Virus record (IMG/VR): IMGVR_UViG_3300023235_000008
Coordinates: 166,060 to 230,059 of that record
DNA length: 64,000 nucleotides
Strand: one strand, 5' to 3'
The translations under genes were made by a program, and so were the position numbers. Below the pieces are notes generated by a model that had not been told where the DNA came from, did not search any database, and was given only the letters and a program-made list of their open reading frames with translations. This document shows positions 12,732 to 31,568 of the stretch, in pieces. Position 1 is the stretch's first letter, and every line of letters begins with the position of its first letter.

Positions 12732-13445
12732 ATGATCAAGTTTACAGACATTCCAAATACAACGTTTAAAGGTTTCCGAGTATTCGGTGACGTGCATGGC
12801 GAGTTCGACGATATGGTTGAAATCGTTACAGGCGCACTTAACGAAGACTTGTTTCCGATTGGACTAGGCGACTTTACTGATCGTGGTCCAGAATCAGACA
12901 AAGTTATGGCTTATGTATTGATGATGGCACGTAACGGTTTGTTCGCCAGCATCATTGGTAACCACGACGACAAGTTGTGGCGGGCTTTGAACGGCAACAA
13001 TGTTAAAATCAACAACGGGTTGGAATTGACATTAGAGCAGTTGAACAACAACGATGACCGTGAAGGCATCGTTAATGAGTGGTTAACTGCAATGCCCAAT
13101 ATGCCATTGTTTGCTACATTTGACAAATATACTTTTGTTCACGGTTCATTTCATCCTGCGATGTTGACGGCTGACGAGTTGGCATACAAAGATAAAAAAG
13201 GATGGGGCAAAGTTGTTTCCCGTGCAATGTATGGTCAAGTTGATGGATTTCAAGAAAACGGTTACCCTAATCGTATCCACGATTGGGTTGATACTATTCC
13301 CGCTGGACATACAGTGTTCGTCGGTCACGAGGTTGTAGGCGATGTGCCAATAACCAAAACAGGTGCCTTGGGTGGCACGGCGCACTTCTTGGACACTGGT
13401 TCGGGCAAGGGCGGTTCAATCTCATTTATGGACGTGGAGTTTTAA
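12732..13445 (+). CDS. Calcineurin-like metallophosphoesterase (Pnkp phosphatase/PrpA/ApaH type)
   Basis: GDVHG, GDFTDRGP, GNHD, FVHG, VFVGH, LDTG motifs. Confidence 0.85.
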   Translation: MIKFTDIPNTTFKGFRVFGDVHGEFDDMVEIVTGALNEDLFPIGLGDFTDRGPESDKVMAYVLMMARNGLFASIIGNHDDKLWRALNGNNVKINNGLELTLEQLNNNDDREGIVNEWLTAMPNMPLFATFDKYTFVHGSFHPAMLTADELAYKDKKGWGKVVSRAMYGQVDGFQENGYPNRIHDWVDTIPAGHTVFVGHEVVGDVPITKTGALGGTAHFLDTGSGKGGSISFMDVEF

Positions 13446-13450
13446 AAACA

Positions 13451-13648
13451 ATGAAAGACAACTATAGCGGAGAACTTGCTTTCTTAGGATTGATTGCTTT
13501 CGCATTCGTAATCCTTGCAGTCGCTGGGTGGTTCACACACTTGTATGTGTGCTTTACCACGGCGGCTTGGGGCTTCCTTATCGCAGGGGCAATCTTCTTT
13601 CCAATCGGGGTATTCCACGGTTGGGGTAGTTGGTTCGGAATCTGGTAA
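13451..13648 (+). CDS. Small membrane protein
   Basis: Hydrophobic; conserved-looking GWFTHLYVCF...FFPIGVFHGW. Confidence 0.65.
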   Translation: MKDNYSGELAFLGLIAFAFVILAVAGWFTHLYVCFTTAAWGFLIAGAIFFPIGVFHGWGSWFGIW

Positions 13649-14052
13649 TGGCAATAATACATTTCTTTTTCGTATGGGGTATTCTATATGCCGCATCAAA
13701 CAACTACTACGACAATCCCGAGAACTACTATATGTATGTAGCAGTATTGGGTGCGTATGCTATCTCAATGATCGGCATATATATATGGCGTATCATTAAG
13801 CCGCAGGATATAACCGAAATCAAAGAAAAGTTGGTTACGATTACAATTGAGACAAATAATGATATGTTTATGCCCGAACTCTTTAAATGGATGACTACAT
13901 TTATTACTGTTCATCACGCTGCGGTTATAATGGCGACGGTGTATTTGTTGCCCGAACCAAACGTAATCCTTGCCATGTTGTTTATGGCGGCATATACACT
14001 TTGTGGTATTATTACCGACAAAACATTAGACCGTCTTTACCAAAAAGGATAA
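13648..14052 (+). CDS. Membrane protein
   Basis: Several hydrophobic helices; TAATG coupling. Confidence 0.6.
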   Translation: MAIIHFFFVWGILYAASNNYYDNPENYYMYVAVLGAYAISMIGIYIWRIIKPQDITEIKEKLVTITIETNNDMFMPELFKWMTTFITVHHAAVIMATVYLLPEPNVILAMLFMAAYTLCGIITDKTLDRLYQKG

Positions 14053-14061
14053 CCAATATAT

Positions 14062-14247
14062 ATGTTAATATCATCAGATTCCGACCAAACCCAAGAAACA
14101 TCAGAAAAACTCGAAGGTTATATTCTCGGATATATACAGCTTGGGTTTGGCGAAGATGCAGCTGCGCAGTGGCGAGTCAGTCGCATAACATTCTGTACTA
14201 ACGACGAGTTTGAAAAATATATGTTTTGGCAACAACTTTCTGCTTGA
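14062..14247 (+). CDS. Hypothetical protein
   Basis: ORF in operon. Confidence 0.5.
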   Translation: MLISSDSDQTQETSEKLEGYILGYIQLGFGEDAAAQWRVSRITFCTNDEFEKYMFWQQLSA

Positions 14248-14271
14248 CATTCATCTAACTTAGGGTATAAT
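14244..14271 (+). promoter_or_regulatory. sigma70 promoter (leaderless transcript)
   Basis: TTGACA-16-TATAAT; ATG 8 nt downstream. Confidence 0.7.
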
Positions 14272-14278
14272 ACTTATT

Positions 14279-15484
14279 ATGAAATATAACTTTCCACATA
14301 TCAATCACATCAATGATGTCCTTCCACATATCGAAGGTCGTAAAGAGTTCGTTGTGGCAGAACGAGATGGATTTACGGTTATCAACTATGTCGTAATGAC
14401 GCCTGACCTGTTCCCACCAGTTGTTACTGAAGCAGATGCAATACTGCGTGAATGTCGTGGCATCACTTTCTGCAATGAAACGGGCAAAGTCGTAGCTCGA
14501 AAGTTTCACAAGTTCTTTAACGTTGGCGAACGCATGGAAACCGAGTTCCGTAAACTGGATTTAAGTCAGCCACACGTTATTCTTGAAAAGCTTGATGGCT
14601 CAATGATTACGCCGTATCTGCGTGATGGTAAAGTTGAATGGCATACCAAAATGGGCAAGACTGATGTTGCCGATATGGTTATTCCTTTCGTTGAAGCAAA
14701 TCCACAGTATGCTGAACTGGCAGATTTCATATTGCGTAATAATAACGCTACGCCAATATTTGAGTTCTGTTCACGCAAGAATCGTGTTGTGATTGACCAT
14801 CCAGAAGACCGTATGGTATTACTGGCGGTGCGTGATAACGTAACTGGAAAGTATTGGGAATACGAGCTTGGTCTTGAAATCCCAGCTGTAGAATTTAATG
14901 TCGAGTTGGTCGGACAGCATAAAGCAACGTTTGACAAGGATTTCCTTGAATATGTTCGTGGCTTGGTCGGAACTGAAGGGTTCGTTGTGCGCTTTGATGA
15001 TGGGCATATGTTGAAAATCAAAGCAGAGGATTACTTACAGTTACATCGTGCCAAAGAAGGTATCTCTCATGAGAAGAATGTTTGGTCAATGGTCCTCAAT
15101 GAGTCAGTAGATGATTTGAAGTCATTCTTAGATGATGATGACCGTATGCGTGTTGAAGATTTTGAAGTGAAGTTATGGCGTGAAGTTGATTACGCTGTTC
15201 AGCACTTGGAAATGTTCTTCGGATTTGCAATGGATGATTTGAACAAGCGTGACCTATCAATGTTTGAAGATGCTGACCGTGAACGTAAGAAGATGTTTGC
15301 CATGGAATACGCTAATAACTACCGTAAAGAGTTCAAAGGTGTCTTGTTCAGCATGTTTGATGGTGGCGATGTGCGTGACTTGGTTATACAGTTCATTAAG
15401 AGCAACGTATCAACTGGAACTAAGTTGGATGGAATACGTCCGTTGTTTAACAACATTCAGTTTGATGAAAGGGAGTATGAATAA
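14279..15484 (+). CDS. rnl1: RNA ligase 1 (T4 Rnl1 family)
   Basis: ECRG, FHKFFNVGE, EKLDGS (motif I), TPIFE, EGFVV, LKIK. Confidence 0.9.
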   Translation: MKYNFPHINHINDVLPHIEGRKEFVVAERDGFTVINYVVMTPDLFPPVVTEADAILRECRGITFCNETGKVVARKFHKFFNVGERMETEFRKLDLSQPHVILEKLDGSMITPYLRDGKVEWHTKMGKTDVADMVIPFVEANPQYAELADFILRNNNATPIFEFCSRKNRVVIDHPEDRMVLLAVRDNVTGKYWEYELGLEIPAVEFNVELVGQHKATFDKDFLEYVRGLVGTEGFVVRFDDGHMLKIKAEDYLQLHRAKEGISHEKNVWSMVLNESVDDLKSFLDDDDRMRVEDFEVKLWREVDYAVQHLEMFFGFAMDDLNKRDLSMFEDADRERKKMFAMEYANNYRKEFKGVLFSMFDGGDVRDLVIQFIKSNVSTGTKLDGIRPLFNNIQFDEREYE

Positions 15485-15996: not shown

Positions 15997-16171
15997 AGAT
16001 CGAGTTCCTACTACTGCACCCTATGGCGGGATAACTGACGGAAGTGTCTACTGTACTCGATGTGGCGAAGAGAGAACAGGGTGCAGTATGTGTGCTGGTG
16101 AACTCAGGAGTTTGAAAGCAGGGCGATCAACCGCCTACAGATTTTGTATAGGAGATGAAAATGCTAAATAA
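15983..16171 (+). CDS. Zinc-finger-like small protein
   Basis: CTRC...CSMC. Confidence 0.5.
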   Translation: MPNNEDRVPTTAPYGGITDGSVYCTRCGEERTGCSMCAGELRSLKAGRSTAYRFCIGDENAK

Positions 16172-16595
16172 ATTGAAAGATGATGCGTTACAAGCGAGGA
16201 AAGATCGTGATCTTTTTGCTAGTTCACTCAACACGCTTTTGTCTGAAGTAAAGATGAGAGCAAAGAACGATGGCAACCGTGAGCCTAACGACGAAGATGT
16301 GTATAAGATAGCACAGACTACAATGGCTTCGTTGCTCGGTAATCGTGACCTATTGGACACTGCAGGACGTGACACGACTGAAGTAGAACAAGAGATGAAA
16401 GTGATTTCTGCTTACGTTCCTACTGTTATGCCGAAGGAAGAAGTCGAAGGTAAAGTTCAACTTGCTATGCATGAAATCAAACCAGAAGGCATGCAAGATA
16501 TGGGCAAAGTGATGTCATGGCTTAAAGAAAAGTATGGAGCTCGTATTGATATGAAACTGGCCTCTCAGCTTTTCCGGGAGCGATTGAATGGATAA
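16161..16595 (+). CDS. yqeY: YqeY/GatB C-terminal domain protein (tRNA-binding fold)
   Basis: LKDDALQARKDRD..LLSEVK..EPNDEDV..EMKVISAYVP..DMGKVM. Confidence 0.85.
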   Translation: MLNKLKDDALQARKDRDLFASSLNTLLSEVKMRAKNDGNREPNDEDVYKIAQTTMASLLGNRDLLDTAGRDTTEVEQEMKVISAYVPTVMPKEEVEGKVQLAMHEIKPEGMQDMGKVMSWLKEKYGARIDMKLASQLFRERLNG

Positions 16596-17108: not shown

Positions 17109-17567
17109 ATGCCTATGTTATATATGCTAATCGGTGTTCCAGCAAGCGGCAAGTCAACTTGGCTTGAACAAAATGCTGATAGTGGTGTAGTTTTAAGCAC
17201 GGACGCACATATTGACAATGTTGCCGCACAACAGGGCAAGTCATATAACGATGTGTTTGGCGATGCGATTAAAAAAGCCACTGTGAAAATGAATAACGAT
17301 TTAAAGCAAGCGGTTAATCGTGGCGAAGATATCCATTGGGATCAAACCAATCTTACGGTTAAATCTCGTCGTGGCAAGCTACAGAAGGTGCCTGATACGT
17401 ATGAAAAGATTGCGGTAGTATTTCCAACACCCGATGCCGACGAACATCAGCGGCGACTGGATTCACGCCCCGGCAAAACTATTCCACCACATATTTTGAA
17501 GAATATGATGGCAACTTTCCAAATGCCTACCACCGATGAAGGATTTGATAGGATAGTAGTAATATGA
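17109..17567 (+). CDS. Polynucleotide kinase-like P-loop protein (AAA_33)
   Basis: GVPASGKST, STD, WDQTN, RR, IP..I. Confidence 0.85.
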   Translation: MPMLYMLIGVPASGKSTWLEQNADSGVVLSTDAHIDNVAAQQGKSYNDVFGDAIKKATVKMNNDLKQAVNRGEDIHWDQTNLTVKSRRGKLQKVPDTYEKIAVVFPTPDADEHQRRLDSRPGKTIPPHILKNMMATFQMPTTDEGFDRIVVI

Positions 17568-19150: not shown

Positions 19151-19223
19151 CAGTAAAGAATAGCCCGTAAGGATACTAACTTTACTGCAGTAAAGAATAG
19201 CCCGTAAGGATACTAACTTTACT
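19151..19223 (+). repeat. Head-to-tail duplicated 37-nt hairpin
   Basis: CAGTAAAGAATAGCCCGTAAGGATACTAACTTTACTG twice (second copy 36/37). Confidence 0.9.
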
Positions 19224-19282: not shown

Positions 19283-19357
19283 CAGGGTGTAGCTCAGTCT
19301 GGCCAGAGTGTCGGTCTTGGAGTCCGAAAGTCGCAGGTTCGAGTCCTGCCACCCTGA
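19283..19357 (+). tRNA. trnP: tRNA-Pro(TGG), CCA not encoded
   Basis: CAGGGTG/CACCCTG acceptor, CT TGG AG loop, TTCGAGT T-loop. Confidence 0.9.
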
Positions 19358-19376
19358 CAGAATACATATAGAGAGA

Positions 19377-19599
19377 ATATGGGCGGGTACGCAACACCGT
19401 AAGTCCCAGAGATTACGTGAGTTAACGGTCCACGCTGACAATCGGGTTCACAGCATGAAATAGGGCAATCGGAATCAACCGTTATCGTCTTTATCTGTTA
19501 TATTATAATAAATGTGAAGACCAATGGAAATCGGTATCACAGATAATATTGCAATAAACTTAATAGTTTCCCAATCGAAGGTGACGATAATATCCATAT
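19377..19599 (+). ncRNA. Structured ncRNA A (shares 18-nt motif with ncRNA B)
   Basis: Terminal stem ATATGG/CCATAT; CGTAAGTCCCAGAGATTA at 19398-19415; nested stems. Confidence 0.55.
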
Positions 19600-19608
19600 A
19601 GATATTTA

Positions 19609-19770
19609 TACTAGGGGCAGCTTAAAGCGTAAGTCCCAGAGATTAGTTACCCCGGTGGTCCTACGGTACGTTGTTTAACCGCTTCGTTATCATGGTCTAG
19701 CGTGGTCGCTAGGGTGAAACAGGCTGGGTAGTAAAATAGTGTGGTAACTATTTGAACCCCGTCCCTAGTA
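19609..19770 (+). ncRNA. Structured ncRNA B
   Basis: Terminal stem TACTAGGG/CCCTAGTA; same 18-mer at 19628-19645; TAGTTACC/GGTAACTA stem. Confidence 0.6.
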
Positions 19771-19782
19771 GCCAAAAGTTTA

Positions 19783-19915
19783 GGATTGGTAGCTGAGAGG
19801 CACAGCGGCACCTTAATGGGTGTGTCGAAACATAAGCACGTAACAAACTCGCCGAGGACGCTCGAACGATAAGGTTACGCCTGTTACGTTGGTTCAAATC
19901 CAACCCAATCCACCA
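19783..19915 (+). tRNA. tRNA-Leu(TAA)-like RNA with ~60-nt extra arm
   Basis: GGATTGG/CCAATCC-A-CCA, intact D and T arms, irregular anticodon loop. Confidence 0.55.
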
Positions 19916-19999
19916 TTTCGCCAAGCGTATCTCGATACTGTCCGAATGCAGTACATAAGCAACGAATGTCGTTGATATTGGGACCGCTACTTTTTTTAA

Positions 20000-20075
20000 T
20001 CCCTACGGGCGAGCAAGCGAACGCACTGGTCTGTTAAACCAGCATTGCCTCGGGCGGTACGAGGGTAGGGAGCCA
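20000..20075 (+). tRNA. trnN: tRNA-Asn(GTT), non-canonical T-loop GGCGGTA
   Basis: TCCCTAC/GTAGGGA-G-CCA; CTGGT CTGTTAA ACCAG. Confidence 0.8.
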
Positions 20076-20086
20076 ATATATATTAT

Positions 20087-20190
20087 CGTGGATGTCAGAA
20101 GCGTTTAAGCTTCGGGTATATTACAACTTTCGTCCCATGGGATGGGTGCCGAAGTGATATATCTGCTGGTGTAAGCCCAGTGCCCACGCC
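20087..20190 (+). ncRNA. tRNA-like RNA with expanded anticodon arm
   Basis: CGTGGAT/GCCCACG stem, GCTGG-TGTAAGC-CCAGT T-arm, GGTATAT/ATATATC stem closing ~35 nt. Confidence 0.4.
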
Positions 20191-20450: not shown

Positions 20451-20456
20451 CTTTAT

Positions 20457-23546: not shown

Positions 23547-23547
23547 C

Positions 23548-23627
23548 GTCTGTCAATATATAGTTACCTCCACGCGGTGACGGATGGAAAAGTTCGATAT
23601 AATATCGAACCTTACTAAATACTATAT
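23548..23627 (+). ncRNA. HDV-like (theta-type) self-cleaving ribozyme 3' of tRNA-Lys
   Basis: P1 GTCTGTC/GACGGAT (G1.U), P2 ATATAGT/ACTATAT, P3 ACC/GGT, L3 TCCACGC, P1.1 GG, P4 hairpin, J4/2 CTAA. Confidence 0.8.
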
Positions 23628-23703: not shown

Positions 23704-23749
23704 TCTCCAGATTATGTTGTCGAGTGGGATTTTGATCCCATTTTTATAT

Positions 23750-24168: not shown

Positions 24169-24218
24169 AAATTCGGTATCGCCAACCAATAAATATACAG
24201 TTGATAAGGATTAACATA

Positions 24219-24290
24219 ATGGCTACTTACATAGGGTTAGGTATTATTGGATTAGCTTTTATATGGTTGATTCATACGATACATAAATAA
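24219..24290 (+). CDS. 23-aa single-TM peptide
   Basis: TAAGGA RBS; MATYIGLGIIGLAFIWLIHTIHK. Confidence 0.45.
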   Translation: MATYIGLGIIGLAFIWLIHTIHK

Positions 24291-24297
24291 AGAATAC

Positions 24298-24382
24298 GGA
24301 GGATACCGAGGTTGGCTCCTCAAACGGTCTTGAAAACCGTGGCACCGCAAGGTTGATAGTTCGATGCTATTATCCTCCGCCA
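24298..24382 (+). tRNA. trnS: tRNA-Ser(TGA)
   Basis: GGAGGAT/ATCCTCC-G-CCA; long variable arm. Confidence 0.9.
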
Positions 24383-24399
24383 TTAATGGAATTTGTAAA

Positions 24400-24588
24400 A
24401 TGATTTTTATACCCACTGATAATGTATACAATCGCATTGGCAATACATTCTTTACAACGATTGAAGAAGCGAAAGCGTGTGAACACAAATGCGTATGTGT
24501 ATCAAATGTAGAAGCGATTGATAGAACATTGCGATTTTACAAAAAGATGGGCAACGCAATTATTGCTTGTGATGTTAAAAAAGTTTAA
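24400..24588 (+). CDS. Hypothetical protein
   Basis: ORF after tRNA-Ser. Confidence 0.45.
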   Translation: MIFIPTDNVYNRIGNTFFTTIEEAKACEHKCVCVSNVEAIDRTLRFYKKMGNAIIACDVKKV

Positions 24589-24596
24589 AATACCTG

Positions 24597-24624
24597 TTGA
24601 CATATCCGTTGGATAGTGTATATT
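24597..24624 (+). promoter_or_regulatory. sigma70 early promoter
   Basis: TTGACA-16-TATATT. Confidence 0.65.
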
Positions 24625-24661
24625 CACATTATCAGTTGAACGCAAACAGGAGATTTTGCAA

Positions 24662-25315
24662 ATGAATATGTTTCAAAAAGCACTTGACGAAGCAGTTGTC
24701 GCACCGAAAGCCGCCAAGTCAAAAAAGCCGAGCAAGCCAGAGATTAACGTTGAAGGTATTGCAGTATTCGCAACCGTTGATGCAGTTATCAAAGGGTTGA
24801 CGGGCATTAAGTCCTCACTTGATGGCGAAATCAAAGCAGAAATCGTTGAGAATGCAGTAGCAACCCGTTCCGCAGAAAGCATTACCGGCATCGGCAATGA
24901 CGAAGATGGTGAGGCTATCGCAAGCGCAAACTTACAGTTACGCAAGCGTGTAGCAACTTCCGCACTTAGCGAAACAGAAGTAGCAATGCTTGCCGCTAAC
25001 GGTGTCAGCACACAGGAAGTCGGCGTTGATAGTCAAATCATTATCAACCCAAAATACAAGAACAACGAAAAGTTGCTGACTAAAATTAGCAAAGCACTTG
25101 AAAAAGTGGCTGGTATGCCAGAAGACTTCATTGTTGCCACACCAGAGTCGAAGAAGACTGTTACTACCGAGAACAGCATCAAAGACGCATTGGCGGTTGA
25201 AGATAAAGAAGTGGTTGCACAGTTGTTGGCAATCGTTGCCACCCCGGCAATCAAAGCAACACTGAACGATCCCGATTTGGCAAAAGCACTTGATCGCCTA
25301 AAAGACCTAATCTAA
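24662..25315 (+). CDS. Early hypothetical protein (highly-expressed codon usage)
   Basis: CAGGAG RBS; own promoter and terminator. Confidence 0.75.
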   Translation: MNMFQKALDEAVVAPKAAKSKKPSKPEINVEGIAVFATVDAVIKGLTGIKSSLDGEIKAEIVENAVATRSAESITGIGNDEDGEAIASANLQLRKRVATSALSETEVAMLAANGVSTQEVGVDSQIIINPKYKNNEKLLTKISKALEKVAGMPEDFIVATPESKKTVTTENSIKDALAVEDKEVVAQLLAIVATPAIKATLNDPDLAKALDRLKDLI

Positions 25316-25320
25316 TCCAA

Positions 25321-25348
25321 GCGGGGGTGAAAGCCCCCGTCATTTAGT
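25321..25348 (+). terminator. GC-rich hairpin terminator
   Basis: GCGGGGG-TGAAAG-CCCCCGT. Confidence 0.6.
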
Positions 25349-25350
25349 TG

Positions 25351-25379
25351 TTGACATCGTATAACATATAGTCTACTAT
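25351..25379 (+). promoter_or_regulatory. sigma70 early promoter
   Basis: TTGACA-17-TACTAT. Confidence 0.65.
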
Positions 25380-25417
25380 CTATTTGTAAGTTGATGAACA
25401 CATTAGGAGAGATTCAG

Positions 25418-25600
25418 ATGTCTACCATTTATGACCAAGCTATTCGTGAAGAAATCAAAGCCAATGCACCTTGCTGCCGCAATGGCATCAAACGATTTGG
25501 TGAAGCTAACGCAACAGGTCGTTCCGATGACATTGTATATTGCAGTTGCCCTAAAGGCGTTACAGAAGCCAATAAAATGCCAGCGTGGATGAACAAATGA
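25418..25600 (+). CDS. Small Cys-containing early protein
   Basis: AGGAG RBS. Confidence 0.6.
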   Translation: MSTIYDQAIREEIKANAPCCRNGIKRFGEANATGRSDDIVYCSCPKGVTEANKMPAWMNK

Positions 25601-25827
25601 ACGTTAGTTTCGAAACAACGATTTTGGGCGGGTTGCCGGTTTATGTTCAAGGCAATGTAGCGCCACCAGAACCTGATGTTGGCATCTTTCATTATTATGT
25701 TTATGATTATGAAATCTTCTGGGCAAGTGGTAAAAAACTGCGGAACATTCCAAACTCAATGTATGAGCGTATGACGGAAGACGAGATTGATGATCTGAAA
25801 GAAGAGATTTTAACTTGGGAACCGTAA
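25597..25827 (+). CDS. Hypothetical early protein
   Basis: ATGA overlap. Confidence 0.6.
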   Translation: MNVSFETTILGGLPVYVQGNVAPPEPDVGIFHYYVYDYEIFWASGKKLRNIPNSMYERMTEDEIDDLKEEILTWEP

Positions 25828-25834
25828 ATAGGGT

Positions 25835-25862
25835 TTGACATAATCGCAAAATCTGCTATACT
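25835..25862 (+). promoter_or_regulatory. sigma70 early promoter
   Basis: TTGACA-16-TATACT. Confidence 0.65.
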
Positions 25863-25888
25863 TCAAATATCAGAAACAGGAGATTAAA

Positions 25889-26110
25889 ATGGCTGCAATG
25901 AAAAACAAGATGATGGAAGTTCAAGACGAAGCACGTGAAGCGTTTGACAATGATACCGGTCTTGAAGCTGGTGTTCAATACAAAGGCACCATGTTTGAAG
26001 AAGTTTTTATCGATGCTTTCATTGAACGCCAAAACGAATACATCGCATACCTTGAACAGACTGCCACCATGAATGCCGCAAACGCTGGTTACGAAAATGG
26101 CGGCTGGTAA
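25889..26110 (+). CDS. Hypothetical early protein
   Basis: CAGGAG RBS. Confidence 0.7.
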   Translation: MAAMKNKMMEVQDEAREAFDNDTGLEAGVQYKGTMFEEVFIDAFIERQNEYIAYLEQTATMNAANAGYENGGW

Positions 26111-26324
26111 ATACGATATCACCTTCATCAAGGATGGCGTATCCGATGCGAACAATAACGGTGAACGATTTGATTTGTTCACCGTTCAGTTTAATGGCAA
26201 GCCCATTATGCAACGTGTTCCACATCATTTCGCTGTTTGGGCAGTTGCCGCAATGCGTGAGTTCGATCCACGGGATAATCACGATGCCTATCGCAAAGTG
26301 CAATCAGAGTGTCCATATGATTAG
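26097..26324 (+). CDS. Hypothetical protein
   Basis: Coupled ORF MAAGKYDITF. Confidence 0.55.
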   Translation: MAAGKYDITFIKDGVSDANNNGERFDLFTVQFNGKPIMQRVPHHFAVWAVAAMREFDPRDNHDAYRKVQSECPYD

Positions 26325-26577
26325 AATGATTAAACGAACGATTAAAGGCTGTGGATATGTTCCCGGATATGGAACGCATCCCGGCACCCCCATTATTTGG
26401 TATTTGACGTTCCTTGGCTTTAGTATTAATCTTGTCAACGGGACATTAATGATGGCAATCGTTAGCGCATCCTTAATGCTTATTATTTTTGGCATTCCTT
26501 ATCTATGGAGTGCGCACGAAAGAGCAGTAGATGGCGAAAAAGATTTCATCAGGGGATTGACAAAAGAATACAAGTAA
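26317..26577 (+). CDS. Membrane protein
   Basis: Hydrophobic segments. Confidence 0.55.
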   Translation: MIRMIKRTIKGCGYVPGYGTHPGTPIIWYLTFLGFSINLVNGTLMMAIVSASLMLIIFGIPYLWSAHERAVDGEKDFIRGLTKEYK

Positions 26578-26585
26578 GGTAGTAT
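26557..26585 (+). promoter_or_regulatory. sigma70 promoter (leaderless transcript)
   Basis: TTGACA-17-TAGTAT; ATG 7 nt downstream. Confidence 0.6.
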
Positions 26586-26591
26586 CTTATT

Positions 26592-27245
26592 ATGAAATAT
26601 GAAACATTCAATTACTGCTTTCCCGGTCGCCCACGTAAAGCGATTGCCCCAGCATTCCTAAACTTTCACGAAAAGCGTGGATGGGTAGGTCAATACAAAA
26701 AGAATGGAACGTGTAACGTTTTGTTTGTATCGCCTGATAAAGAAGTCACGGCTATGACACGACATAACGATACCCACAAACTTTGGACACCCACAGAAGC
26801 TTCTACTGGACTACTCCGCACAGTACCCGGCAATGGCTGGTGGGTGTTTAATGCCGAACTACTACACAGTAAATCACAGGCTGGACCGACCGATACCAAC
26901 TATCTATTCGATGTTCAAGTCGCCGATGGTGAAGTATTACTAGACAAAACATTTGCTGAACGTATTAAGATTATGGAAGACCTATTCTTGAAAGAGGATT
27001 CCGTCGAAGAATATAGCCATTACGTGGTAGGTGAGCGTGTATGGCTTGCTAAGACCATCACAGAGGGGTTTAAAGACAAATGGGACGAAGCAGATAGAGT
27101 TGCAAAAACACTCGATACTTCGCCTACCGATGAAGGATTGGTGTTGAAAAATCCAAAGGCAGTTTTGAAGCCACCGTTTTCAGCAGATTCAAATGCGGCA
27201 TGGCAAGTCAAATGTCGGGTGGCACACACAAACTATGCATTCTGA
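26592..27245 (+). CDS. Stand-alone ATP-dependent ligase/capping-enzyme nucleotidyltransferase domain
   Basis: QYKKNG (motif I), NAELL, YLFDV, EGLVLK, QVKCR; no OB domain. Confidence 0.75.
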   Translation: MKYETFNYCFPGRPRKAIAPAFLNFHEKRGWVGQYKKNGTCNVLFVSPDKEVTAMTRHNDTHKLWTPTEASTGLLRTVPGNGWWVFNAELLHSKSQAGPTDTNYLFDVQVADGEVLLDKTFAERIKIMEDLFLKEDSVEEYSHYVVGERVWLAKTITEGFKDKWDEADRVAKTLDTSPTDEGLVLKNPKAVLKPPFSADSNAAWQVKCRVAHTNYAF

Positions 27246-27459
27246 TAAAAAAGAGTTTTGGGACGCATTAAAGTATCCATCTGAAAAAGGATGCTTTAAC
27301 TGTAAACATAGGGTAGGAACGTCAGTTGAAAATACGTGTTGGCGCTGGTTGTCAGCGGCACCCGAAGCACGGTGCAGTATTACTGAAAAGCGGGGTGGCA
27401 CATCTCGGCTGTATCCATTTTGGGAATGGGATGAAGGATTGAAATGTGACATATTTTAG
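27235..27459 (+). CDS. Cys-rich small protein, paralog of 11799-11975
   Basis: EFWDAL..CFNC..WEWD. Confidence 0.55.
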   Translation: MHSDKKEFWDALKYPSEKGCFNCKHRVGTSVENTCWRWLSAAPEARCSITEKRGGTSRLYPFWEWDEGLKCDIF

Positions 27460-27488
27460 TTGACATCCGCATTCCGCCATGGTATAAT
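27460..27488 (+). promoter_or_regulatory. sigma70 promoter
   Basis: Perfect TTGACA-17-TATAAT. Confidence 0.75.
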
Positions 27489-27498
27489 AAATACTGTA

Positions 27499-27756
27499 AT
27501 GAAAGATATAAAAGAAGCACGGATTTGCCGTGAACAAGAGTTTTATGCTAAGTGTGGCGAACTCTTAGGATTGGAACATAAATATGTTGTTCCGTATAAA
27601 AGAAAAACACGTTGGAACCAACGCAATCCCGGTAACGGTAGATACAAAGGTTTCGGCGTAATAAGATATTTTAACGAAGCGAATATACACGTTATGTGTC
27701 GAAAGGGTTCAAAAACCTTTACCAATGTCGATGCAGTATATGAATGGCTTCAGTGA
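27499..27756 (+). CDS. Hypothetical protein
   Basis: RWNQRNPGNGRY.GFG. Confidence 0.6.
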   Translation: MKDIKEARICREQEFYAKCGELLGLEHKYVVPYKRKTRWNQRNPGNGRYKGFGVIRYFNEANIHVMCRKGSKTFTNVDAVYEWLQ

Positions 27757-27923
27757 GCGAGTGTGGTGAAATTGGTAAACACGCCAGATTTATGAGAGTC
27801 TCCGTTATAGGCTCCAATCTACAAGTTAGATTGTTTGGGGAACCGAGAAGGCTAAACCTTCAAAGTTCAAATCAGGTTCTGGTGCCGAAAGGTTTGGAGG
27901 TTCAAGTCCTCTCACTCGTACCA
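27757..27923 (+). tRNA. trnL: tRNA-Leu(TAG) with an 82-nt structured insert in the anticodon (27793-27874)
   Basis: Removing the insert restores CCAGA TT TAG GT TCTGG; the rest is a perfect Leu cloverleaf with A73-CCA. Confidence 0.85.
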
Positions 27924-27929
27924 AAATAA

Positions 27930-28005
27930 CGTAGGGTGGAGCAGTGGTCAGCTCGTGAGTCTCATAAACTCAAGGTCGGGGGTTCGAATCCCCCCCCTGC
28001 AACCA
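27930..28005 (+). tRNA. trnfM: Initiator tRNA-fMet(CAT)
   Basis: C1.A72 mismatch; CT CAT AA; CCA. Confidence 0.8.
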
Positions 28006-28048
28006 AAATATACAACGATAAATACTATTATCAAAAAGGAGAAAAGCA

Positions 28049-28240
28049 ATGATGATCGTAGGTTATCGTTCAAACGTAAACGCCGCAGAGGGCGTAAGAG
28101 CAGTAGTTAAACACACAGGTAAGCCAGTCGGCGAGGCACGTAAACTAATCGATTCTGCAATCGGTGGACAATCAGTTTTATTCGATTCAGATTGGGTATT
28201 ACGTGAAGACCTCGAAGACAATGGATTTATCATAGACTAA
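28049..28240 (+). CDS. Small protein, weak L7/L12 CTD-like helix motif
   Basis: AAGGAG RBS; VRAVVKHTGKPVGEARKLID. Confidence 0.6.
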   Translation: MMIVGYRSNVNAAEGVRAVVKHTGKPVGEARKLIDSAIGGQSVLFDSDWVLREDLEDNGFIID

Positions 28241-28245
28241 AAAAT

Positions 28246-28320
28246 GCGGATATAGCTCAGAGGCAGAGCAGAAGGTTTCCAACCTTCGTGTCGGGATTTC
28301 GAAATTCCCTATCCGCTCCA
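28246..28320 (+). tRNA. trnG: tRNA-Gly(TCC)
   Basis: GCGGATA/TATCCGC-T-CCA. Confidence 0.9.
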
Positions 28321-28426
28321 ACAAAGCAAAAGCGCTTCACGTTCAATAGTGATGCTCCTTATTTTGATTAAGTTCAAGCCTTCGGGTCATAGGGGTTATA
28401 TACTGGCTAAAGTTGAACATAGTTTC

Positions 28427-28502
28427 GGGGTATTAGCTCATCGGGGAGAGCACGACGTTAGCACGGTCGAGGTGGTAGGTTCGAGTCCTTGTTGGCCCAC
28501 CA
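28427..28502 (+). tRNA. Degenerate tRNA-Ala-like gene, anticodon AGC
   Basis: TT AGC AC loop; mispaired acceptor and T stems; CCA. Confidence 0.55.
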
Positions 28503-28508
28503 ATATAT

Positions 28509-28585
28509 AGTTGCGTAGCATAACTGGCGAATGCCGACTCCTCATAAGAGTTTTTATTCTGGTTCGAATCCAGACGTGACTACCA
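28509..28585 (+). tRNA. trnI: tRNA-Ile2/Met(CAT)
   Basis: AGTTGCG/CGTGACT-A-CCA; CT CAT AA. Confidence 0.8.
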
Positions 28586-28623
28586 AAATAAAAGGCGCAG
28601 GAACACGTTCCATAAATATATGT

Positions 28624-29321
28624 ATGAAAAGTATGTTTGAAGAAAACCCCGTTTATCGGGATGGATGGGAATATGATGATAATATCAAAGCCAATAAAGT
28701 AGTATATGCTATTGGATGCAGTTGGATACATTATAGTTGGTTCACTCGGGTACACGCTCTAAAATATCCAGACACCCTTCTTATCAATAGGTCATTCGGC
28801 GGTCATGGAAATAGTATGATTATAGACACGGTAAAACGTGAATATGATCTAATGCAAAAGTTTGATGATATATATTTTATAGTTTGTTTCTCCGAAGTAG
28901 GTAGAAATATCAAAGACTTTTCATATCAAAATCCAAAAAATTACAACGGTGTTCAAGAATATGAAAAAGCAATACTATACAATCAGATGGAATGCATTGA
29001 TCAGTTTCTCGGCAATGAACAAAGGTTTATAACAACCAGTTTCGTCAGTAATCCATATAATAATAATAAGCGTATTATTGACTTCTGTGAAAAGACATAT
29101 GATCAACCATGCGAAAGTTATACAGCTGCACCGGTGCATTCGAATACCTCAAAGATAGAAATAAGGTGTTCGATTTTGATTTGAATACATTAAGCAACGA
29201 CTTAGAGGATTGTATTAAATATATCGATTGGATGAATAGCCACAAACACATAGAAAATAATCACGCATTTGGATTCACGCCATATGAAAGTTTTATAGAT
29301 TATTTTTATCATGATAAATAA
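28624..29321 (+). pseudogene. SGNH-hydrolase-like gene split by a frameshift near 29115-29120
   Basis: AIGCSW and NRSFGGHGN blocks; continues in the frame of ORF 29109-29321. Confidence 0.5.
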
Positions 29322-29413
29322 TAATACACCTTGAACGGACCCGTAATGTTGGATGGGCCGCGCCCCTTGAGGTTTTCTAAGGCTCAATCGCCAACACGAA
29401 AGAGTTACAAAAT

Positions 29414-29512
29414 GCCCCTATAGCTGAGTGGTTTAGCAAGGGTTTTGTCAAGTACATCCGAGGGTGTATTTGAAAAACCCTAGACCGGAGTTCGATTCTT
29501 CGTGGGGGCACC
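29414..29512 (+). tRNA. trnT: tRNA-Thr(TGT) with a 25-nt hairpin insert (29449-29473)
   Basis: AGGGT TT TGT [CAAGTACATC-CGAG-GGTGTATTTG-A] AA ACCCT; GCCCCTA/TGGGGGC-A-CCA. Confidence 0.85.
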
Positions 29513-29527
29513 ATTCCTAAAATATTA

Positions 29528-29596
29528 GGGGCTGCTGTATGGGACAGACTCTGCACTTGCACTGCGGATGGTGGGGATCGTTACCCCATAGCTCCA
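29528..29596 (+). tRNA. trnA: tRNA-Ala(TGC), CCA not encoded
   Basis: G3.U70 pair, A73, CT TGC AC. Confidence 0.8.
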
Positions 29597-29664
29597 GATT
29601 GATAATATTGACTACCTCCACGTGGTATCAATCGGAAACTACAGAAATGTAGGCTAAATGTCAA
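29597..29664 (+). ncRNA. HDV-like (theta-type) ribozyme starting right after the tRNA-Ala discriminator
   Basis: P1 GATTGAT/ATCAATC, P2 TTGAC/GTCAA, P3 ACC/GGT, L3 TCCACGT, GG, P4 CTACA-GAAA-TGTAG, J4/2 GCTAA. Confidence 0.85.
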
Positions 29665-29674
29665 AAAGAATAAA

Positions 29675-29830
29675 GGGTCTTTAGCTCAGTTGGTAGAGCA
29701 TCTCGCTTATGTGAGACTTCCTATAGTCTCCGGTCTATTGTTAGACCGTCATTGGTATACTGCGAAGGGAAATCTTCAAAGTTAATGAACATCGAGAATG
29801 TCGGCGGTTCAAACCCGTCAAGACCCACCA
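29675..29830 (+). tRNA. trnV: tRNA-Val(TAC) with an 80-nt structured insert in the anticodon (29710-29789)
   Basis: Removing the insert restores TCTCG CT TAC AT CGAGA; GGGTCTT/AAGACCC-A-CCA. Confidence 0.85.
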
Positions 29831-29896
29831 TTTTAGAGGTATATGGTTAAAGTCCATATTTAAAGCGACGGTCAGTTCTCGCCTCTACTATAATAT

Positions 29897-29985
29897 GGAT
29901 AGTTGGCTGAGTTGGCCGAAAGCGCTCGATTGCTAATTGAGTGAACCGCAAGGTTCCGTGGGTTCGAATCCCACACTATCCGCCA
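29897..29985 (+). tRNA. trnS: tRNA-Ser(GCT)
   Basis: GGATAGT/ACTATCC-G-CCA; long variable arm. Confidence 0.9.
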
Positions 29986-29991
29986 ATTGTA

Positions 29992-30020
29992 TTGACATTC
30001 GTTGTCAATTTTGATATACT
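29992..30020 (+). promoter_or_regulatory. sigma70 promoter
   Basis: TTGACA-17-TATACT. Confidence 0.65.
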
Positions 30021-30044
30021 TAATTAAACATGGATATTTAATAA

Positions 30045-31175
30045 ATGATCATAGACGATGTGCCACGTGGATATACTGTCAACAATAAACTATTTTTCAA
30101 CCGCCATTTAGCTCACATTGAGCAAATGACGAATGGAGGGCTACTTGAGTTTAATATGTTTGATGACGCTTTCAGCAAATATAATTGGAAAATAGACCCT
30201 ACATTATCATTTGAGGAATTGATAGATATCCGAGCACACCAAATCAGAGAAACCAATGATGTGGTTGTGTTATGGTTTAGTGGTGGTACAGATAGTCTCA
30301 CGATGTATAATGCATTTATTCGCAACAATTTACACATTGATGAAATCATTGTTAGGTATTGGCCGATAGCTGGTCATTTTGGTATCGACAAATCAATTAT
30401 CGACTGGCTTTATGAACATCATCCTGACAAAAAAACTACTATAACGACGATTGACCAAACAGATAAGACTGTTCTATCATCCAATTTATACACAGATGAA
30501 TGGACATTATTGAATATGGGATTTGCTAAACATTTGAACGCTGCTGTAGTTTGGGGAACAGACGCCCTTAGTAAAAAATATGAAAACAGGAAATGGGTAC
30601 AAGTACATGGTTTCGAAAAACCACACTTGGTATACCGTAATGAAAAATTCTCTGCTTGGCATTTGGACCTTCCTTATCAATCAACTTTAGGTCACGAAAA
30701 TATGGAATACTTTTTCATAAGTCCTGAATTACCAGAACTACATATAAAGCAGTGCCATCTGCTAAAGAATCATTTAGTAGATAACCTATCGCATACATTA
30801 CATGAGGATTTTAGGTCAGAAAAACTATTTGAAACTACTGACCAGTCATCGTATATGAACTTATCAGTTCATGGGTGTGGCAGACACGGTGAAATACATC
30901 ATAAAATATGTGTTAGTGAGAAATCACTAATAAGGTCTAAAAAAGTTATATTTTCAAAGACAGAAAATTACAATGATTTGAAATTCACTGGATACCAATC
31001 TATACTTCACGCCAGCGCCAATAATATTGATAATATGAAGCATTGGTACAATGGCAGACTTGAGCTTATCAAATCCCCTGTGATGAAATATATGCTGGAT
31101 AGAAACCTAGTGACAAATAAAGACGACCCATTCAGTTTCGTCGGGATGTATTCCAAACAGTACGATCTAGAATGA
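30045..31175 (+). CDS. PP-loop (adenine nucleotide alpha-hydrolase-like) protein
   Basis: VVLWFSGGTDS; YFFISPELPELHIKQCH. Confidence 0.7.
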   Translation: MIIDDVPRGYTVNNKLFFNRHLAHIEQMTNGGLLEFNMFDDAFSKYNWKIDPTLSFEELIDIRAHQIRETNDVVVLWFSGGTDSLTMYNAFIRNNLHIDEIIVRYWPIAGHFGIDKSIIDWLYEHHPDKKTTITTIDQTDKTVLSSNLYTDEWTLLNMGFAKHLNAAVVWGTDALSKKYENRKWVQVHGFEKPHLVYRNEKFSAWHLDLPYQSTLGHENMEYFFISPELPELHIKQCHLLKNHLVDNLSHTLHEDFRSEKLFETTDQSSYMNLSVHGCGRHGEIHHKICVSEKSLIRSKKVIFSKTENYNDLKFTGYQSILHASANNIDNMKHWYNGRLELIKSPVMKYMLDRNLVTNKDDPFSFVGMYSKQYDLE

Positions 31176-31270
31176 TATTATCATTATTGGCTATTATAAG
31201 TGGATTGGTTTCTGGTATTTTTATCGGATATTTGAATGGATGGGCATCTTGTCCATCCATTCATAAATAA
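31172..31270 (+). CDS. 32-aa TM peptide
   Basis: ATGA overlap; hydrophobic. Confidence 0.4.
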   Translation: MILSLLAIISGLVSGIFIGYLNGWASCPSIHK

Positions 31271-31367
31271 ATGATGGACGCAATTTATAACTTTCTTGCC
31301 ACGGCTATCATTGTTGTATTGACACCGCTTATCGTATACTCTATAATAAGCATTACATTTTACATTT

Positions 31368-31443
31368 CTTCCCGTGGTGAAACTGGATATCACACTAGTC
31401 TTCTAAACTTGTATTTCGAGTTCGAGTCTCGACGGGAAGACCA
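31368..31443 (+). tRNA. trnR: tRNA-Arg(TCT)
   Basis: CTTCCCG/CGGGAAG-A-CCA; CT TCT AA. Confidence 0.85.
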
Positions 31444-31449
31444 TAATAC

Positions 31450-31568
31450 GGGTGCGTGGTGGAATTGGTATACACGCCAGACTTTTCAGTAAGGCTTTCG
31501 GAAACGAGAGTTTTACAAAAAATCTGGTGCCTTATGGATTGCGGGTTCGAGTCCCGCCGCACCCACCA
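31450..31568 (+). tRNA. trnL: tRNA-Leu(TAA) with a 34-nt hairpin insert (about 31485-31518)
   Basis: CCAGA CT T[TTCA-GTAAGGCTTTCG-GAAA-CGAGAGTTTTAC-AA]AA AA TCTGG; perfect Leu body. Confidence 0.8.

What the first reader, a model, noticed from the sequence alone, without database searches (positions are those of the whole stretch)
12732..31568. Candidate system: anticodon-interrupted tRNAs plus phage RNA healing/sealing enzymes
Seen: the array covers all 20 amino acids, but the only Thr and Val tRNAs and both canonical Leu tRNAs in the window are the four interrupted ones (inserts of 82, 80, 25, 34 nt). All four have U34 and intact stems, unlike the decayed pseudo-tRNAs nearby, which argues for selection on function. 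The window also encodes an Rnl1 ligase, a PNK-type kinase, a metallophosphoesterase and a second stand-alone ligase domain. Known: T4 Rnl1/Pnk repair PrrC-cut tRNA-Lys. Inference: the enzymes may complete excision and ligation of the inserts, or the inserts may hide anticodon loops from host anticodon nucleases or act as decoys.
Basis: inference. Interest (0 to 1): 0.85.

Follow-up and report, generated by a model that had tools for sequence, protein, structure and literature searches.

The report
Phage tRNA genes split by mini-inserts
Four tRNA genes of an uncultured 230-kb T4-like phage carry precise 26-82-base inserts in the anticodon loop, next to a complete RNA heal-and-seal enzyme set, which hints at protein-assisted tRNA splicing in a bacterial virus, but the link between inserts and enzymes is not shown.

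Summary
tRNA-Leu(UAG), Thr(UGU), Val(UAC) and Leu(UAA) carry inserts of 82, 26 (not 25), 80 and 34 nt in the anticodon loop. Removing the inserts in silico restores canonical tRNAs.

The closest relative found (about 75% nt identity, syntenic array) has uninterrupted Thr, Val and Leu(UAA). The inserts are therefore lineage-specific.

Exons of the interrupted genes are as conserved as those of uninterrupted neighbours (68-86% against 61-74%). Their stem changes are compensatory, so they do not look like decaying genes.

The 82- and 80-nt inserts are two copies of one four-helix RNA, with 7 doubly compensated pairs out of 21. It matches no Rfam family and was found nowhere else. The two short inserts are stable hairpins that extend the anticodon stem.

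They are not group I introns, not bulge-helix-bulge introns and not RNase III-type.

Rnl1, a Pnkp-like kinase, a Pnkp-like metallophosphoesterase and a minimal ligase domain are all intact. However, Rnl1 is common in phages without such inserts, and the minimal ligase is kept by the insert-free relative. Two HDV-like ribozymes abutting tRNA 3' ends give the healing enzymes another job.

Verdict: probably real mini-introns. The removal mechanism and the role of the enzymes remain untested.

The parts
27757..27923 (+). tRNA-Leu(UAG), type II. It is interrupted by an 82-nt structured insert at 27793-27874 (position 35|36; 34|35 is equally possible).
29414..29513 (+). tRNA-Thr(UGU), interrupted by a 26-nt hairpin insert at 29449-29474 (position 36|37).
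29675..29830 (+). tRNA-Val(UAC), interrupted by an 80-nt structured insert at 29710-29789. The insert is homologous to the one in Leu(UAG).
31450..31568 (+). tRNA-Leu(UAA), type II, interrupted by a 34-nt hairpin insert at 31485-31518 (position 34|35).
12714..13445 (+). Binuclear metallophosphoesterase with all catalytic motifs. Its closest solved relative is 4j6o. It is a candidate 2',3'-cyclic phosphodiesterase / 3'-phosphatase for healing RNA ends. An ATG start lies at 12732.
14279..15484 (+). T4-type RNA ligase 1 (Rnl1), full length, with the motif I lysine conserved.
17109..17567 (+). Stand-alone P-loop polynucleotide-kinase-like protein, resembling the kinase module of Pnkp. It has no fused phosphatase.
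26592..27245 (+). Minimal stand-alone ligase-type nucleotidyltransferase domain inside the tRNA array. The insert-free relative also has it.
29597..29665 (+). HDV-like (theta-like) self-cleaving ribozyme candidate. Its first base follows the discriminator of tRNA-Ala(UGC), which has no encoded CCA.
23547..23626 (+). Second HDV-like ribozyme candidate, directly after tRNA-Lys(UUU), which also has no encoded CCA.

Best explanation
The four inserts are true intervening sequences (mini-introns) gained in this phage lineage.

Shown:
- They are precise insertions into otherwise canonical anticodon loops, splitting or abutting the anticodon.
- Insert-free alleles exist in the nearest relative.
- The exons stay under tRNA-like constraint.
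- The inserts themselves are constrained RNA structures. One four-helix family of about 80 nt is present twice. Two simple hairpins stack on the anticodon stem.

Inferred:
- The pre-tRNAs are cut at both insert borders by an activity not yet identified. It could be a host RNase, an unrecognised phage nuclease, or self-cleavage in the case of the 80-nt element.
- The exon halves stay held together by the tRNA body.
- If the ends are 2',3'-cyclic phosphate and 5'-OH, they are healed by the phage metallophosphoesterase and kinase. They are then joined in the anticodon loop by the phage Rnl1. This would parallel the fungal and plant Trl1 pathway.

My estimates: removal from the transcript about 0.55-0.6; use of the phage enzymes, given removal, about 0.5.
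For: - Precise inserts and canonical products.
- Empty sites in a syntenic relative; the blastn match to the window stops at the start of the Thr insert.
- Exon identity to the relative is 86, 75 and 68% for interrupted genes against 74, 70, 67, 65 and 61% for uninterrupted genes, with cloverleaves intact.
- Shared fold of the two long inserts: Pa GAGUC/GGCUC vs GAGAC/GUCUC, Pb AAUCUA/UAGAUU vs GGUCUA/UAGACC, Pd GUUUG/CAAAU vs UCAUU/AAUGA, Pc GAAGG/CCUUC vs GAAGG/UCUUC. That is 7 double and 1 single compensatory change and no disruption (sequences; folds).
- Hairpin inserts fold with z = -5.5 and -5.2.
- The two long inserts are only about 75% identical. If they diverged in place, the host genes have been interrupted for long without decaying.
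- Codons read by the four tRNAs are heavily used (TTA 0.27, TTG 0.21, CTA 0.16, ACA 0.35, GTA 0.28), as for the other U34 tRNAs of the array.
- Intact Rnl1, kinase and phosphoesterase.
Against: - No endonuclease candidate was found among about 50 ORFs scanned against Pfam, with some also against PHROGs or NCBIfam.
- The four sites share no cutting geometry: positions are 34|35, 34-36 and 36|37, there is no bulge-helix-bulge, and the overhangs are inconsistent.
- Rnl1 is widespread in phages without interrupted tRNAs.
- The minimal ligase is conserved in the insert-free relative.
- The array tolerates several clearly decayed tRNA-like genes, so not every gene in it is needed.
- The inserts could be recent, which would also leave the exons intact.
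- No homologue of the 80-nt element was found anywhere else, so its conservation rests on two copies in one genome.
Confidence: 0.4

Rival explanations
1. The inserts are small selfish or accidental insertions that simply inactivate four tRNA genes, and nothing removes them. The enzymes are the ordinary T4-type defence against host anticodon nucleases and have nothing to do with the inserts.
For: - The same array holds other damaged tRNA-like genes. These include 19783-19915 with a 62-nt expansion of the variable region, 22820-23172 with a roughly 271-nt insertion, 23181-23278, 23638-23696 and 20783-20858.
- A free-standing HNH endonuclease sits in the array.
- The nearest relative manages with uninterrupted genes.
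- Aberrant or interrupted tRNA-likes are common in phage arrays.
- Rnl1 is common in phages.
Against: - The exons of the four genes are not more diverged than uninterrupted neighbours, and they keep every stem.
- The inserts keep RNA-level structure with sense-strand G-U pairs and compensatory changes.
- No other copies of the inserts exist in the window or in any collection searched. That is unusual for an active mobile element.
- These are the only Thr, Val and Leu tRNAs seen, and they read abundant codons.
Confidence: 0.25
2. The healing and sealing enzymes are not dedicated to the inserts. Their main jobs would be to reverse cuts by host anticodon nucleases (the T4 role) and to remove the 2',3'-cyclic phosphate that the two HDV-like ribozymes leave on the 3' ends of tRNA-Ala and tRNA-Lys. 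That removal allows CCA to be added. This reading can hold whether or not the inserts are spliced.
For: - Two HDV-like ribozyme candidates abut the discriminator of tRNAs that lack an encoded CCA.
- In the relative, Ala has an encoded CCA and no ribozyme.
- Phages with theta ribozymes are reported to be 140-fold enriched in an RNA ligase family and 250-fold in CCA-adding enzyme (PMC10879173).
- The phosphoesterase is closest to 4j6o, which as I recall is the end-healing phosphatase domain of Clostridium thermocellum Pnkp.
- Kinase, phosphoesterase and ligase occur fused in phrog_8238.
- Rnl1 is present in 1808 phage records.
Against: - A ligase is not needed for healing a 3' end.
- The ribozyme scores are just below Rfam thresholds (41.5 against 44; 28.9 against 37).
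- No CCA-adding enzyme was found in the window.
Confidence: 0.5
3. The 80-nt element is a new small ribozyme that cleaves (or cleaves and rejoins) at its own borders, so the two long inserts are self-processing. The short hairpins would be handled by host RNases.
For: - It is a compact four-helix junction with conserved unpaired stretches (AAAGUU, UAUAG, ACYGNGAAGG) and covarying helices.
- The same array already uses small ribozymes for tRNA processing.
- Self-cleavage would give exactly the ends that the kinase and phosphoesterase heal.
Against: - No match to any Rfam ribozyme, even at E up to 10 on 2 kb.
- Only two copies are known.
- No precedent exists for an 80-nt RNA that excises itself precisely.
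- The two short inserts cannot work this way.
Confidence: 0.1
4. The chimeric RNAs act unspliced. They could be decoys or shields against anticodon nucleases. Alternatively they could be tRNA-scaffolded small RNAs that use the tRNA body for processing and stability.
For: - All four have U34, the class most often hit by anticodon nucleases (p about 0.04).
- The insert splits the anticodon in at least three of the four.
- The inserts are stable structured RNAs.
Against: - The exact halves of the 7-nt anticodon loop are retained on both sides of every insert, which a decoy or scaffold does not need.
- The phage would then lack Thr, Val and Leu tRNAs for abundant codons, while its relative keeps them.
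Confidence: 0.1

Closest known systems
'Enigmatic' introns in tRNAs of Lak megaphages (Devoto et al. 2019, PMC6784885)
   Same: Phage tRNA genes are interrupted by short sequences that fit no known intron class, and alleles with and without the insert exist among relatives.
   Different: The phage lineage and host are different. Homology was not tested because no Lak sequences were at hand. Here two inserts form a covarying four-helix family, and the genome also carries a heal-and-seal enzyme set. That paper does not mention a ligase, kinase or endonuclease.
Fungal/plant Trl1 tRNA splicing, and T4 Pnk + Rnl1 anticodon-loop repair
   Same: A kinase, a 2',3'-end phosphoesterase and an Rnl1-type ligase are able in principle to join tRNA halves broken in the anticodon loop.
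   Different: No splicing endonuclease and no bulge-helix-bulge or ruler-type sites are present. The phosphatase is a metallophosphoesterase (Pnkp type), not the T4 HAD type or the Trl1 2H type. The three activities are on separate genes.
Group I introns in bacterial tRNA anticodon loops (for example cyanobacterial tRNA-Leu(UAA), between U34 and A35)
   Same: The location is the same: three of the four inserts can be placed at 34|35, and one is in tRNA-Leu(UAA).
   Different: The inserts are 26-82 nt against 200 nt or more. They have no group I core, no Rfam hit and no terminal G.
Theta (HDV-like) ribozymes next to phage tRNAs (Kienbeck et al. 2024, PMC10879173)
   Same: Two candidates lie directly 3' of tRNAs that lack CCA, and RNA ligase genes are in the same genome.
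   Different: They flank tRNAs rather than interrupt them. The phage is an environmental T4-like jumbo phage, not a gut phage of Bacteroidota or Bacillota. The scores are slightly below Rfam cut-offs.

Membership tests
Group I intron | Catalytic core (P3-P9) of about 200 nt or more, recognised by the Rfam group I model | tested here: not met
   The inserts are 26-82 nt. No Rfam hit on them at gathering score or at E up to 10.
Group I intron | Terminal G at the 3' end of the intron | tested here: not met
   The last insert base is A in all four. In the alternative register for Leu(UAG) it is C.
Archaeal/eukaryal tRNA intron | Bulge-helix-bulge motif (two 3-nt bulges 4 bp apart) holding both splice sites | tested here: not met
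   Thr and Leu(UAA) fold as near-perfect hairpins with a 1-nt bulge or a 2x2 loop. Val has a 3-nt bulge plus a 4-bp helix (AUGU/ACAU) but no second bulge or inner helix. Leu(UAG) lacks even that (manual reading).
Archaeal/eukaryal tRNA intron | Canonical position 37|38 | tested here: not met
   The positions are 34|35, 34|35 or 35|36 (twice), and 36|37. They were fixed by comparison with uninterrupted homologues.
Archaeal/eukaryal tRNA intron | Splicing endonuclease (EndA/Sen) encoded or available | tested here: inconclusive
   None among about 50 window ORFs scanned against Pfam. 166 kb of the genome and the host are unseen.
T4 Pnk/Rnl1 tRNA repair | Rnl1-family ligase with a KxDG adenylylation lysine | tested here: met
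   Pfam 4.5e-29; phrog_562 covers residues 1-379; aligned to T4 Rnl1 (2c5u) with KLDG opposite KEDG.
T4 Pnk/Rnl1 tRNA repair | Bifunctional Pnk: kinase fused to a DxDxT (HAD) 3'-phosphatase | tested here: not met
   The kinase is a stand-alone 152-aa protein. Phosphoesterase activity would come from a separate metallophosphoesterase.
Bacterial Pnkp/Hen1 RNA repair | Kinase + binuclear metallophosphoesterase + ligase modules | tested here: met
   All three match parts of the fused phrog_8238. The kinase hits TIGR04075 (bacter_Pnkp) at 6.4e-6. The phosphoesterase hits 4j6o at 5.6e-17. They are on three genes, and the ligase is of Rnl1 type.
Bacterial Pnkp/Hen1 RNA repair | Hen1 2'-O-methyltransferase partner | tested here: inconclusive
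   No methyltransferase hit among the ORFs scanned in the window. The rest of the genome is unseen.
HDV-like / theta ribozyme (the two flanking elements, not the inserts) | Nested double-pseudoknot fold scored by the Rfam HDV-like models | tested here: inconclusive
   41.5 bits against a gathering score of 44 (E about 1e-5), and 28.9 bits against 37 (E 0.02). P1, P2 and P4 differ between the two copies while staying paired, and both share the core ACCUCCACGYGGU.
HDV-like / theta ribozyme (the two flanking elements, not the inserts) | Starts directly after a tRNA that lacks an encoded CCA | tested here: met
   Cleavage is predicted between A29596 and G29597, after the discriminator of tRNA-Ala. 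For tRNA-Lys it is predicted at or one base after the discriminator.
Known small self-cleaving ribozymes (hammerhead, twister, pistol, hatchet, hairpin and others) for the inserts | Match to the family's covariance model | tested here: not met
   No hit on the inserts at E up to 10 in a 2-kb search.

The most novel reading that the evidence does not exclude
A bacteriophage runs its own tRNA splicing. Short structured introns sit in the anticodon loops of its only Thr, Val and Leu tRNAs. They are cut out, either by a new small ribozyme (the 80-nt four-helix element) or by an unrecognised nuclease. The halves are then rejoined by a phage-encoded kinase, cyclic-phosphodiesterase and Rnl1 set. This would be the first heal-and-seal tRNA splicing pathway outside eukaryotes. 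It could serve to keep these U34 tRNAs invisible to host anticodon nucleases until they are matured.
Probability: 0.25. Interest if true: 0.9.

Novelty: new variant of a known kind. Interest (0 to 1): 0.68.

Why it matters
Bacteria and their viruses are thought to have only self-splicing introns in tRNA genes. Small non-group-I inserts in phage tRNAs have been seen once (Lak megaphages) and were left unexplained.

This case is well suited for testing, for four reasons:
- There are four inserts of two kinds in one array.
- Insert-free alleles exist in a close relative.
- There is evidence that the interrupted genes are still under selection.
- The same genome encodes every enzyme needed to rejoin cut tRNA halves.

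If the inserts are spliced, three things follow. It would show how a tRNA intron can be maintained without a self-splicing core or an archaeal-type endonuclease. It would give T4-type RNA repair enzymes a housekeeping role. It might also yield a new small ribozyme or a new RNA-cutting enzyme.

Tried and rejected
1. Group I, bulge-helix-bulge and every Rfam family are rejected for the inserts (manual reading).

2. RNase III-type excision is rejected. The Thr hairpin would give roughly a 2-nt 3' overhang. The Leu(UAA) sites give a 5' overhang in either pairing register. There is no common geometry.

3. A fixed-distance 'ruler' cut is rejected. It would give a Thr body with a UAA anticodon.

4. 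Ile(UAU), ARAGORN's reading of the Val gene, is rejected. Six uninterrupted phage tRNA-Val genes have the identical anticodon arm with loop CTTACAT.

5. Homologues of the 80-nt element were sought in several ways:
- Two exact-pattern scans of IMG/VR and JGI metagenomes. These found only the phage's own contig and the same phage in a second sample, L114.
- One scan of 185,579 species genomes, which gave chance hits only.
- blastn against GenBank phages, which found nothing.
- A four-helix descriptor search of 4.5 Mb of fetched loci, which found nothing.

6. Relatives were sought through the hub protein, the PP-loop protein and ORF 28531-29184. The homologues found were not in tRNA arrays. The useful relative came from the ligase-like gene.

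7. AlphaFold of the ligase-like protein from a single sequence failed (pLDDT 31). A profile search of the PDB gave only weak DNA-ligase hits (E 0.02).

8. ORF 30045-31175 inside the array is a PP-loop ATP pyrophosphatase (SGGTDS motif, model pLDDT 81, generic fold matches). In relatives it is not linked to tRNAs, so I do not count it as part of the system.

9. Co-occurrence of Rnl1 with interrupted tRNAs across phages could not be measured. Fetched loci are too short, and the relative's contigs are 7.4 kb or less.

10. The other 166 kb of the contig were not scanned for tRNAs. The Leu D-arm pattern matched the contig only at the two known genes.


Full report
**Source and setting.** The window is the last 64 kb of IMGVR_UViG_3300023235_000008, which is also Ga0222634_1000013 (230,059 bp). 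The phage is a T4-like jumbo myovirus. The window holds a gp23 capsid protein, a gp21 protease, a gp5-like hub, gp46/47-like proteins and a gp55-like late sigma factor. The capsid protein is 62-65% identical to those of Sinorhizobium phage Phosso, Vibrio phage 2.275.O and Pseudomonas phage PA5oct. No close relative exists in GenBank phages. GC content is 39.5%.

**The observation.** A tRNA array runs from 19283 to 31568 on the + strand. With introns allowed, ARAGORN finds four long genes. Rfam's tRNA model spans three of them with a large local insertion, at 49.7-55.2 bits, which is within the range of the uninterrupted tRNAs. Reading the sequence gives the following:

| Gene | tRNA | Anticodon loop with insert | Insert coordinates |
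|---|---|---|---|
| 27757-27923 | Leu(UAG) | TTTA[82]GGT | 27793-27874 |
| 29414-29513 | Thr(UGU) | TTTGT[26]AA | 29449-29474 |
| 29675-29830 | Val(UAC) | CTTA[80]CAT | 29710-29789 |
| 31450-31568 | Leu(UAA) | CTT[34]AAAA | 31485-31518 |

- Uninterrupted phage tRNAs share the same D arm, anticodon stem and loop. For the two Leu genes, 93 IMG/VR loci were found.
- A Thr(UGU) with the same acceptor stem and loop TTTGTAA exists.
- Six Val(UAC) genes have the identical anticodon arm.
- With the inserts removed in a script, ARAGORN calls all four as canonical tRNAs.
- Minor corrections: the Thr insert is 26 nt rather than 25, and Asn is covered only by defective copies.
- U34 in all four is weakly non-random (12 of 25 intact tRNAs have U34; p about 0.04).

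**What the inserts are.** The 82- and 80-nt inserts are about 75% identical and share four helices:
- Pa: GAGUC/GGCUC against GAGAC/GUCUC.
- Pb: AAUCUA/UAGAUU against GGUCUA/UAGACC.
- Pd: GUUUG/CAAAU against UCAUU/AAUGA.
- Pc: GAAGG/CCUUC against GAAGG/UCUUC.

Of 21 pairs, 7 change on both sides, 1 changes on one side, and none is broken. The unpaired stretches AAAGUU, UAUAG and ACYGNGAAGG are conserved.

The 26- and 34-nt inserts are very stable hairpins that extend the anticodon stem (z = -5.5 and -5.2). The long inserts fold with z = -2.1 and -3.8. All helices contain G-U pairs on the tRNA-sense strand, which would be A-C mismatches on the other strand. The structure is therefore selected in the transcript.

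None of the inserts matches an Rfam family, even at E up to 10 in a 2-kb search. They are too short for group I and do not end in G. They show no bulge-helix-bulge. They share no RNase III-like stagger.

No further copy exists in any place searched:
- the window;
- 4.5 Mb of fetched loci;
- IMG/VR and JGI metagenomes, by exact pattern (only the same phage in a second sample);
- GenBank phages;
- 185,579 species genomes.

**The relative with empty sites.** The ligase-like gene 26592-27245 has a homologue that is 78-80% identical on short contigs from four samples (L270-L275). These contigs are about 75% identical in DNA to window stretches 24703-27303, 27510-28270, 29323-29451 and 31274-31757.
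- They carry uninterrupted Thr(UGU), Ala(UGC), Val(UAC), Arg(UCU) and Leu(UAA).
- The DNA match to the window stops at 29451, close to the first base of the Thr insert (29449).
- The inserts are therefore a difference between close lineages, and the three tRNA species are kept in both.
- Exon identity between the two phages is 86% (Thr), 75% (Leu-UAA) and 68% (Val).
- For uninterrupted tRNAs it is 74, 70, 67, 65 and 61%.
- Differences in stems are compensatory; for example the Thr anticodon stem is ACGGU/ACCGU against AGGGU/ACCCU.
- There is thus no sign of relaxed constraint on the interrupted genes.
- The two long inserts differ from each other about as much as the two phages do. If they diverged in place, the host genes have stayed intact through a long interrupted history.
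- The codons read by the four tRNAs are abundant.

**The enzymes.**
- Rnl1 (14279-15484) is a full-length homologue of T4 Rnl1.
- The kinase (17109-17567) has a Walker A motif, and its best curated hit is the kinase end of bacterial Pnkp.
- The phosphoesterase (12714-13445) has all the metallophosphoesterase motifs. It is far closer to 4j6o (5.6e-17) than to protein phosphatases (about 1e-4). From memory, 4j6o is the phosphatase domain of Clostridium thermocellum Pnkp.
- All three match parts of one fused PHROG family, phrog_8238.
- The 217-aa protein at 26592-27245 carries ligase motifs I (KKNG), III, IIIa, IV (EGLVLK) and V. These are invariant in a large family of stand-alone proteins found on many jumbo-phage contigs. 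Its nearest solved relatives are ATP-dependent DNA ligases, but only weakly.

**Is there a system?** It is established, from my own knowledge, that T4 Pnk plus Rnl1 can do the healing and sealing steps of tRNA splicing. The enzymes are therefore competent in principle. Nothing here ties them to the inserts.
- Rnl1 is in 1808 of 50,697 phage records.
- The minimal ligase is kept by the insert-free relative.
- No nuclease other than an HNH homing endonuclease (21141-21554) was recognised among about 50 ORFs scanned against Pfam.
- The healing enzymes have another substrate in the same array. Two HDV-like ribozyme candidates start right after tRNA-Ala(UGC) (29597-29665, 41.5 bits, E about 1e-5) and tRNA-Lys(UUU) (23547-23626). 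Both tRNAs lack an encoded CCA.
- Such ribozymes leave a 2',3'-cyclic phosphate on the tRNA, which must be removed before CCA addition.
- The theta-ribozyme paper reports strong enrichment of an RNA ligase family and of CCA-adding enzyme in such phages (PMC10879173).
- In the relative, tRNA-Ala has its CCA and there is no ribozyme.

**Wider context.** Interrupted phage tRNAs were first reported in Lak megaphages as 'enigmatic introns' (PMC6784885). I found no later paper that explains them. A scan of IMG/VR for one common D arm followed by a T arm 46-76 nt away gave at least 70 genes with intact acceptor and anticodon stems.
- Many are from giant viruses and have eukaryote-type introns.
- Some are from phages. 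One example is a Thr(UGU) with a 42-nt hairpin insert in a tRNA array that also holds a related HNH gene (L141, 342-kb contig).
- Hairpin inserts in phage anticodon loops are therefore not unique to this genome.

**Verdict.** The most likely reading (about 0.55-0.6) is that the inserts are removed from the transcripts. Rejoining by the phage's own heal-and-seal enzymes is plausible but untested, so the joint confidence is about 0.4 or less. Dead genes, unspliced function and self-processing remain open. The enzyme set may serve other ends in any case.

Noticed in passing
window 29597-29665 and 23547-23626 (+): Two HDV-like (theta-like) ribozyme candidates start at or next to the discriminator of tRNA-Ala(UGC) and tRNA-Lys(UUU). 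Both tRNAs lack an encoded CCA. The two candidates share the core ACCUCCACGYGGU, and their P1, P2 and P4 helices differ while staying paired. The close relative has neither the ribozyme nor the missing CCA.
   Followed up: partly
window 19783-19915, 20783-20858, 22820-23172, 23181-23278, 23638-23696 (+): Several damaged or odd tRNA-like genes sit in the array. One has a 62-nt structured expansion of the variable region. One has a roughly 271-nt insertion. One is Asn-like with a foreign hairpin in place of the T arm. One is a truncated Asn. One is a decayed Gly(UCC).
   Followed up: partly
window 38962-40788 (+) and 40789-42444 (-): The gp55-like late sigma factor gene is 608 aa. It matches the family only at residues 1-191 and 514-598, so about 320 aa are inserted (possibly an intein). 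A 551-aa HNH homing endonuclease gene lies next to it.
   Followed up: no
window 12293-12691, 16155-16595, 30045-31175 (+): Translation-related extras: a protein with a ribosomal L7/L12 C-terminal domain, a YqeY/GatB-like protein, and a PP-loop (SGGTDS) ATP pyrophosphatase inside the tRNA array. The specific function of the PP-loop protein is unknown (model pLDDT 81, only generic fold matches).
   Followed up: partly
window 19151-19223 and 19399 / 19629 (+): A perfect tandem pair of 36-nt units lies at 19151-19223. A 17-nt motif, GTAAGTCCCAGAGATTA, occurs twice 230 nt apart in the non-coding stretch between tRNA-Pro and the odd tRNA at 19783. Neither has an Rfam match.
   Followed up: no
L229:3831-4185 (three in tandem), L135:12571-12683, and L201, L153, L145, L209, L172, L224: A recurring kind of tRNA-like gene occurs in other phage contigs. 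It has normal acceptor, D and T arms (some with CCA). In place of the anticodon loop there are about 45-56 nt made of a hairpin followed by a conserved ACAGCAA-like stretch. I have no explanation for it.
   Followed up: no
L141:6675-6792 (= L191:13001-13118): Another jumbo phage contig (342 kb) carries tRNA-Thr(UGU) interrupted by a 42-nt hairpin whose first and last bases pair (TTT|G...C|GTAA). It lies in an array with uninterrupted Val and Leu genes and an HNH gene related to window 21141-21554.
   Followed up: partly
window 26592-27245; proteins P0016-P0135: A family of more than 288 stand-alone ligase-type nucleotidyltransferase domains of about 210 aa. Many are on contigs of 200-550 kb, and some lie among aminoacyl-tRNA synthetase and peptidyl-tRNA hydrolase genes (L282). 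The substrate is unknown.
   Followed up: partly
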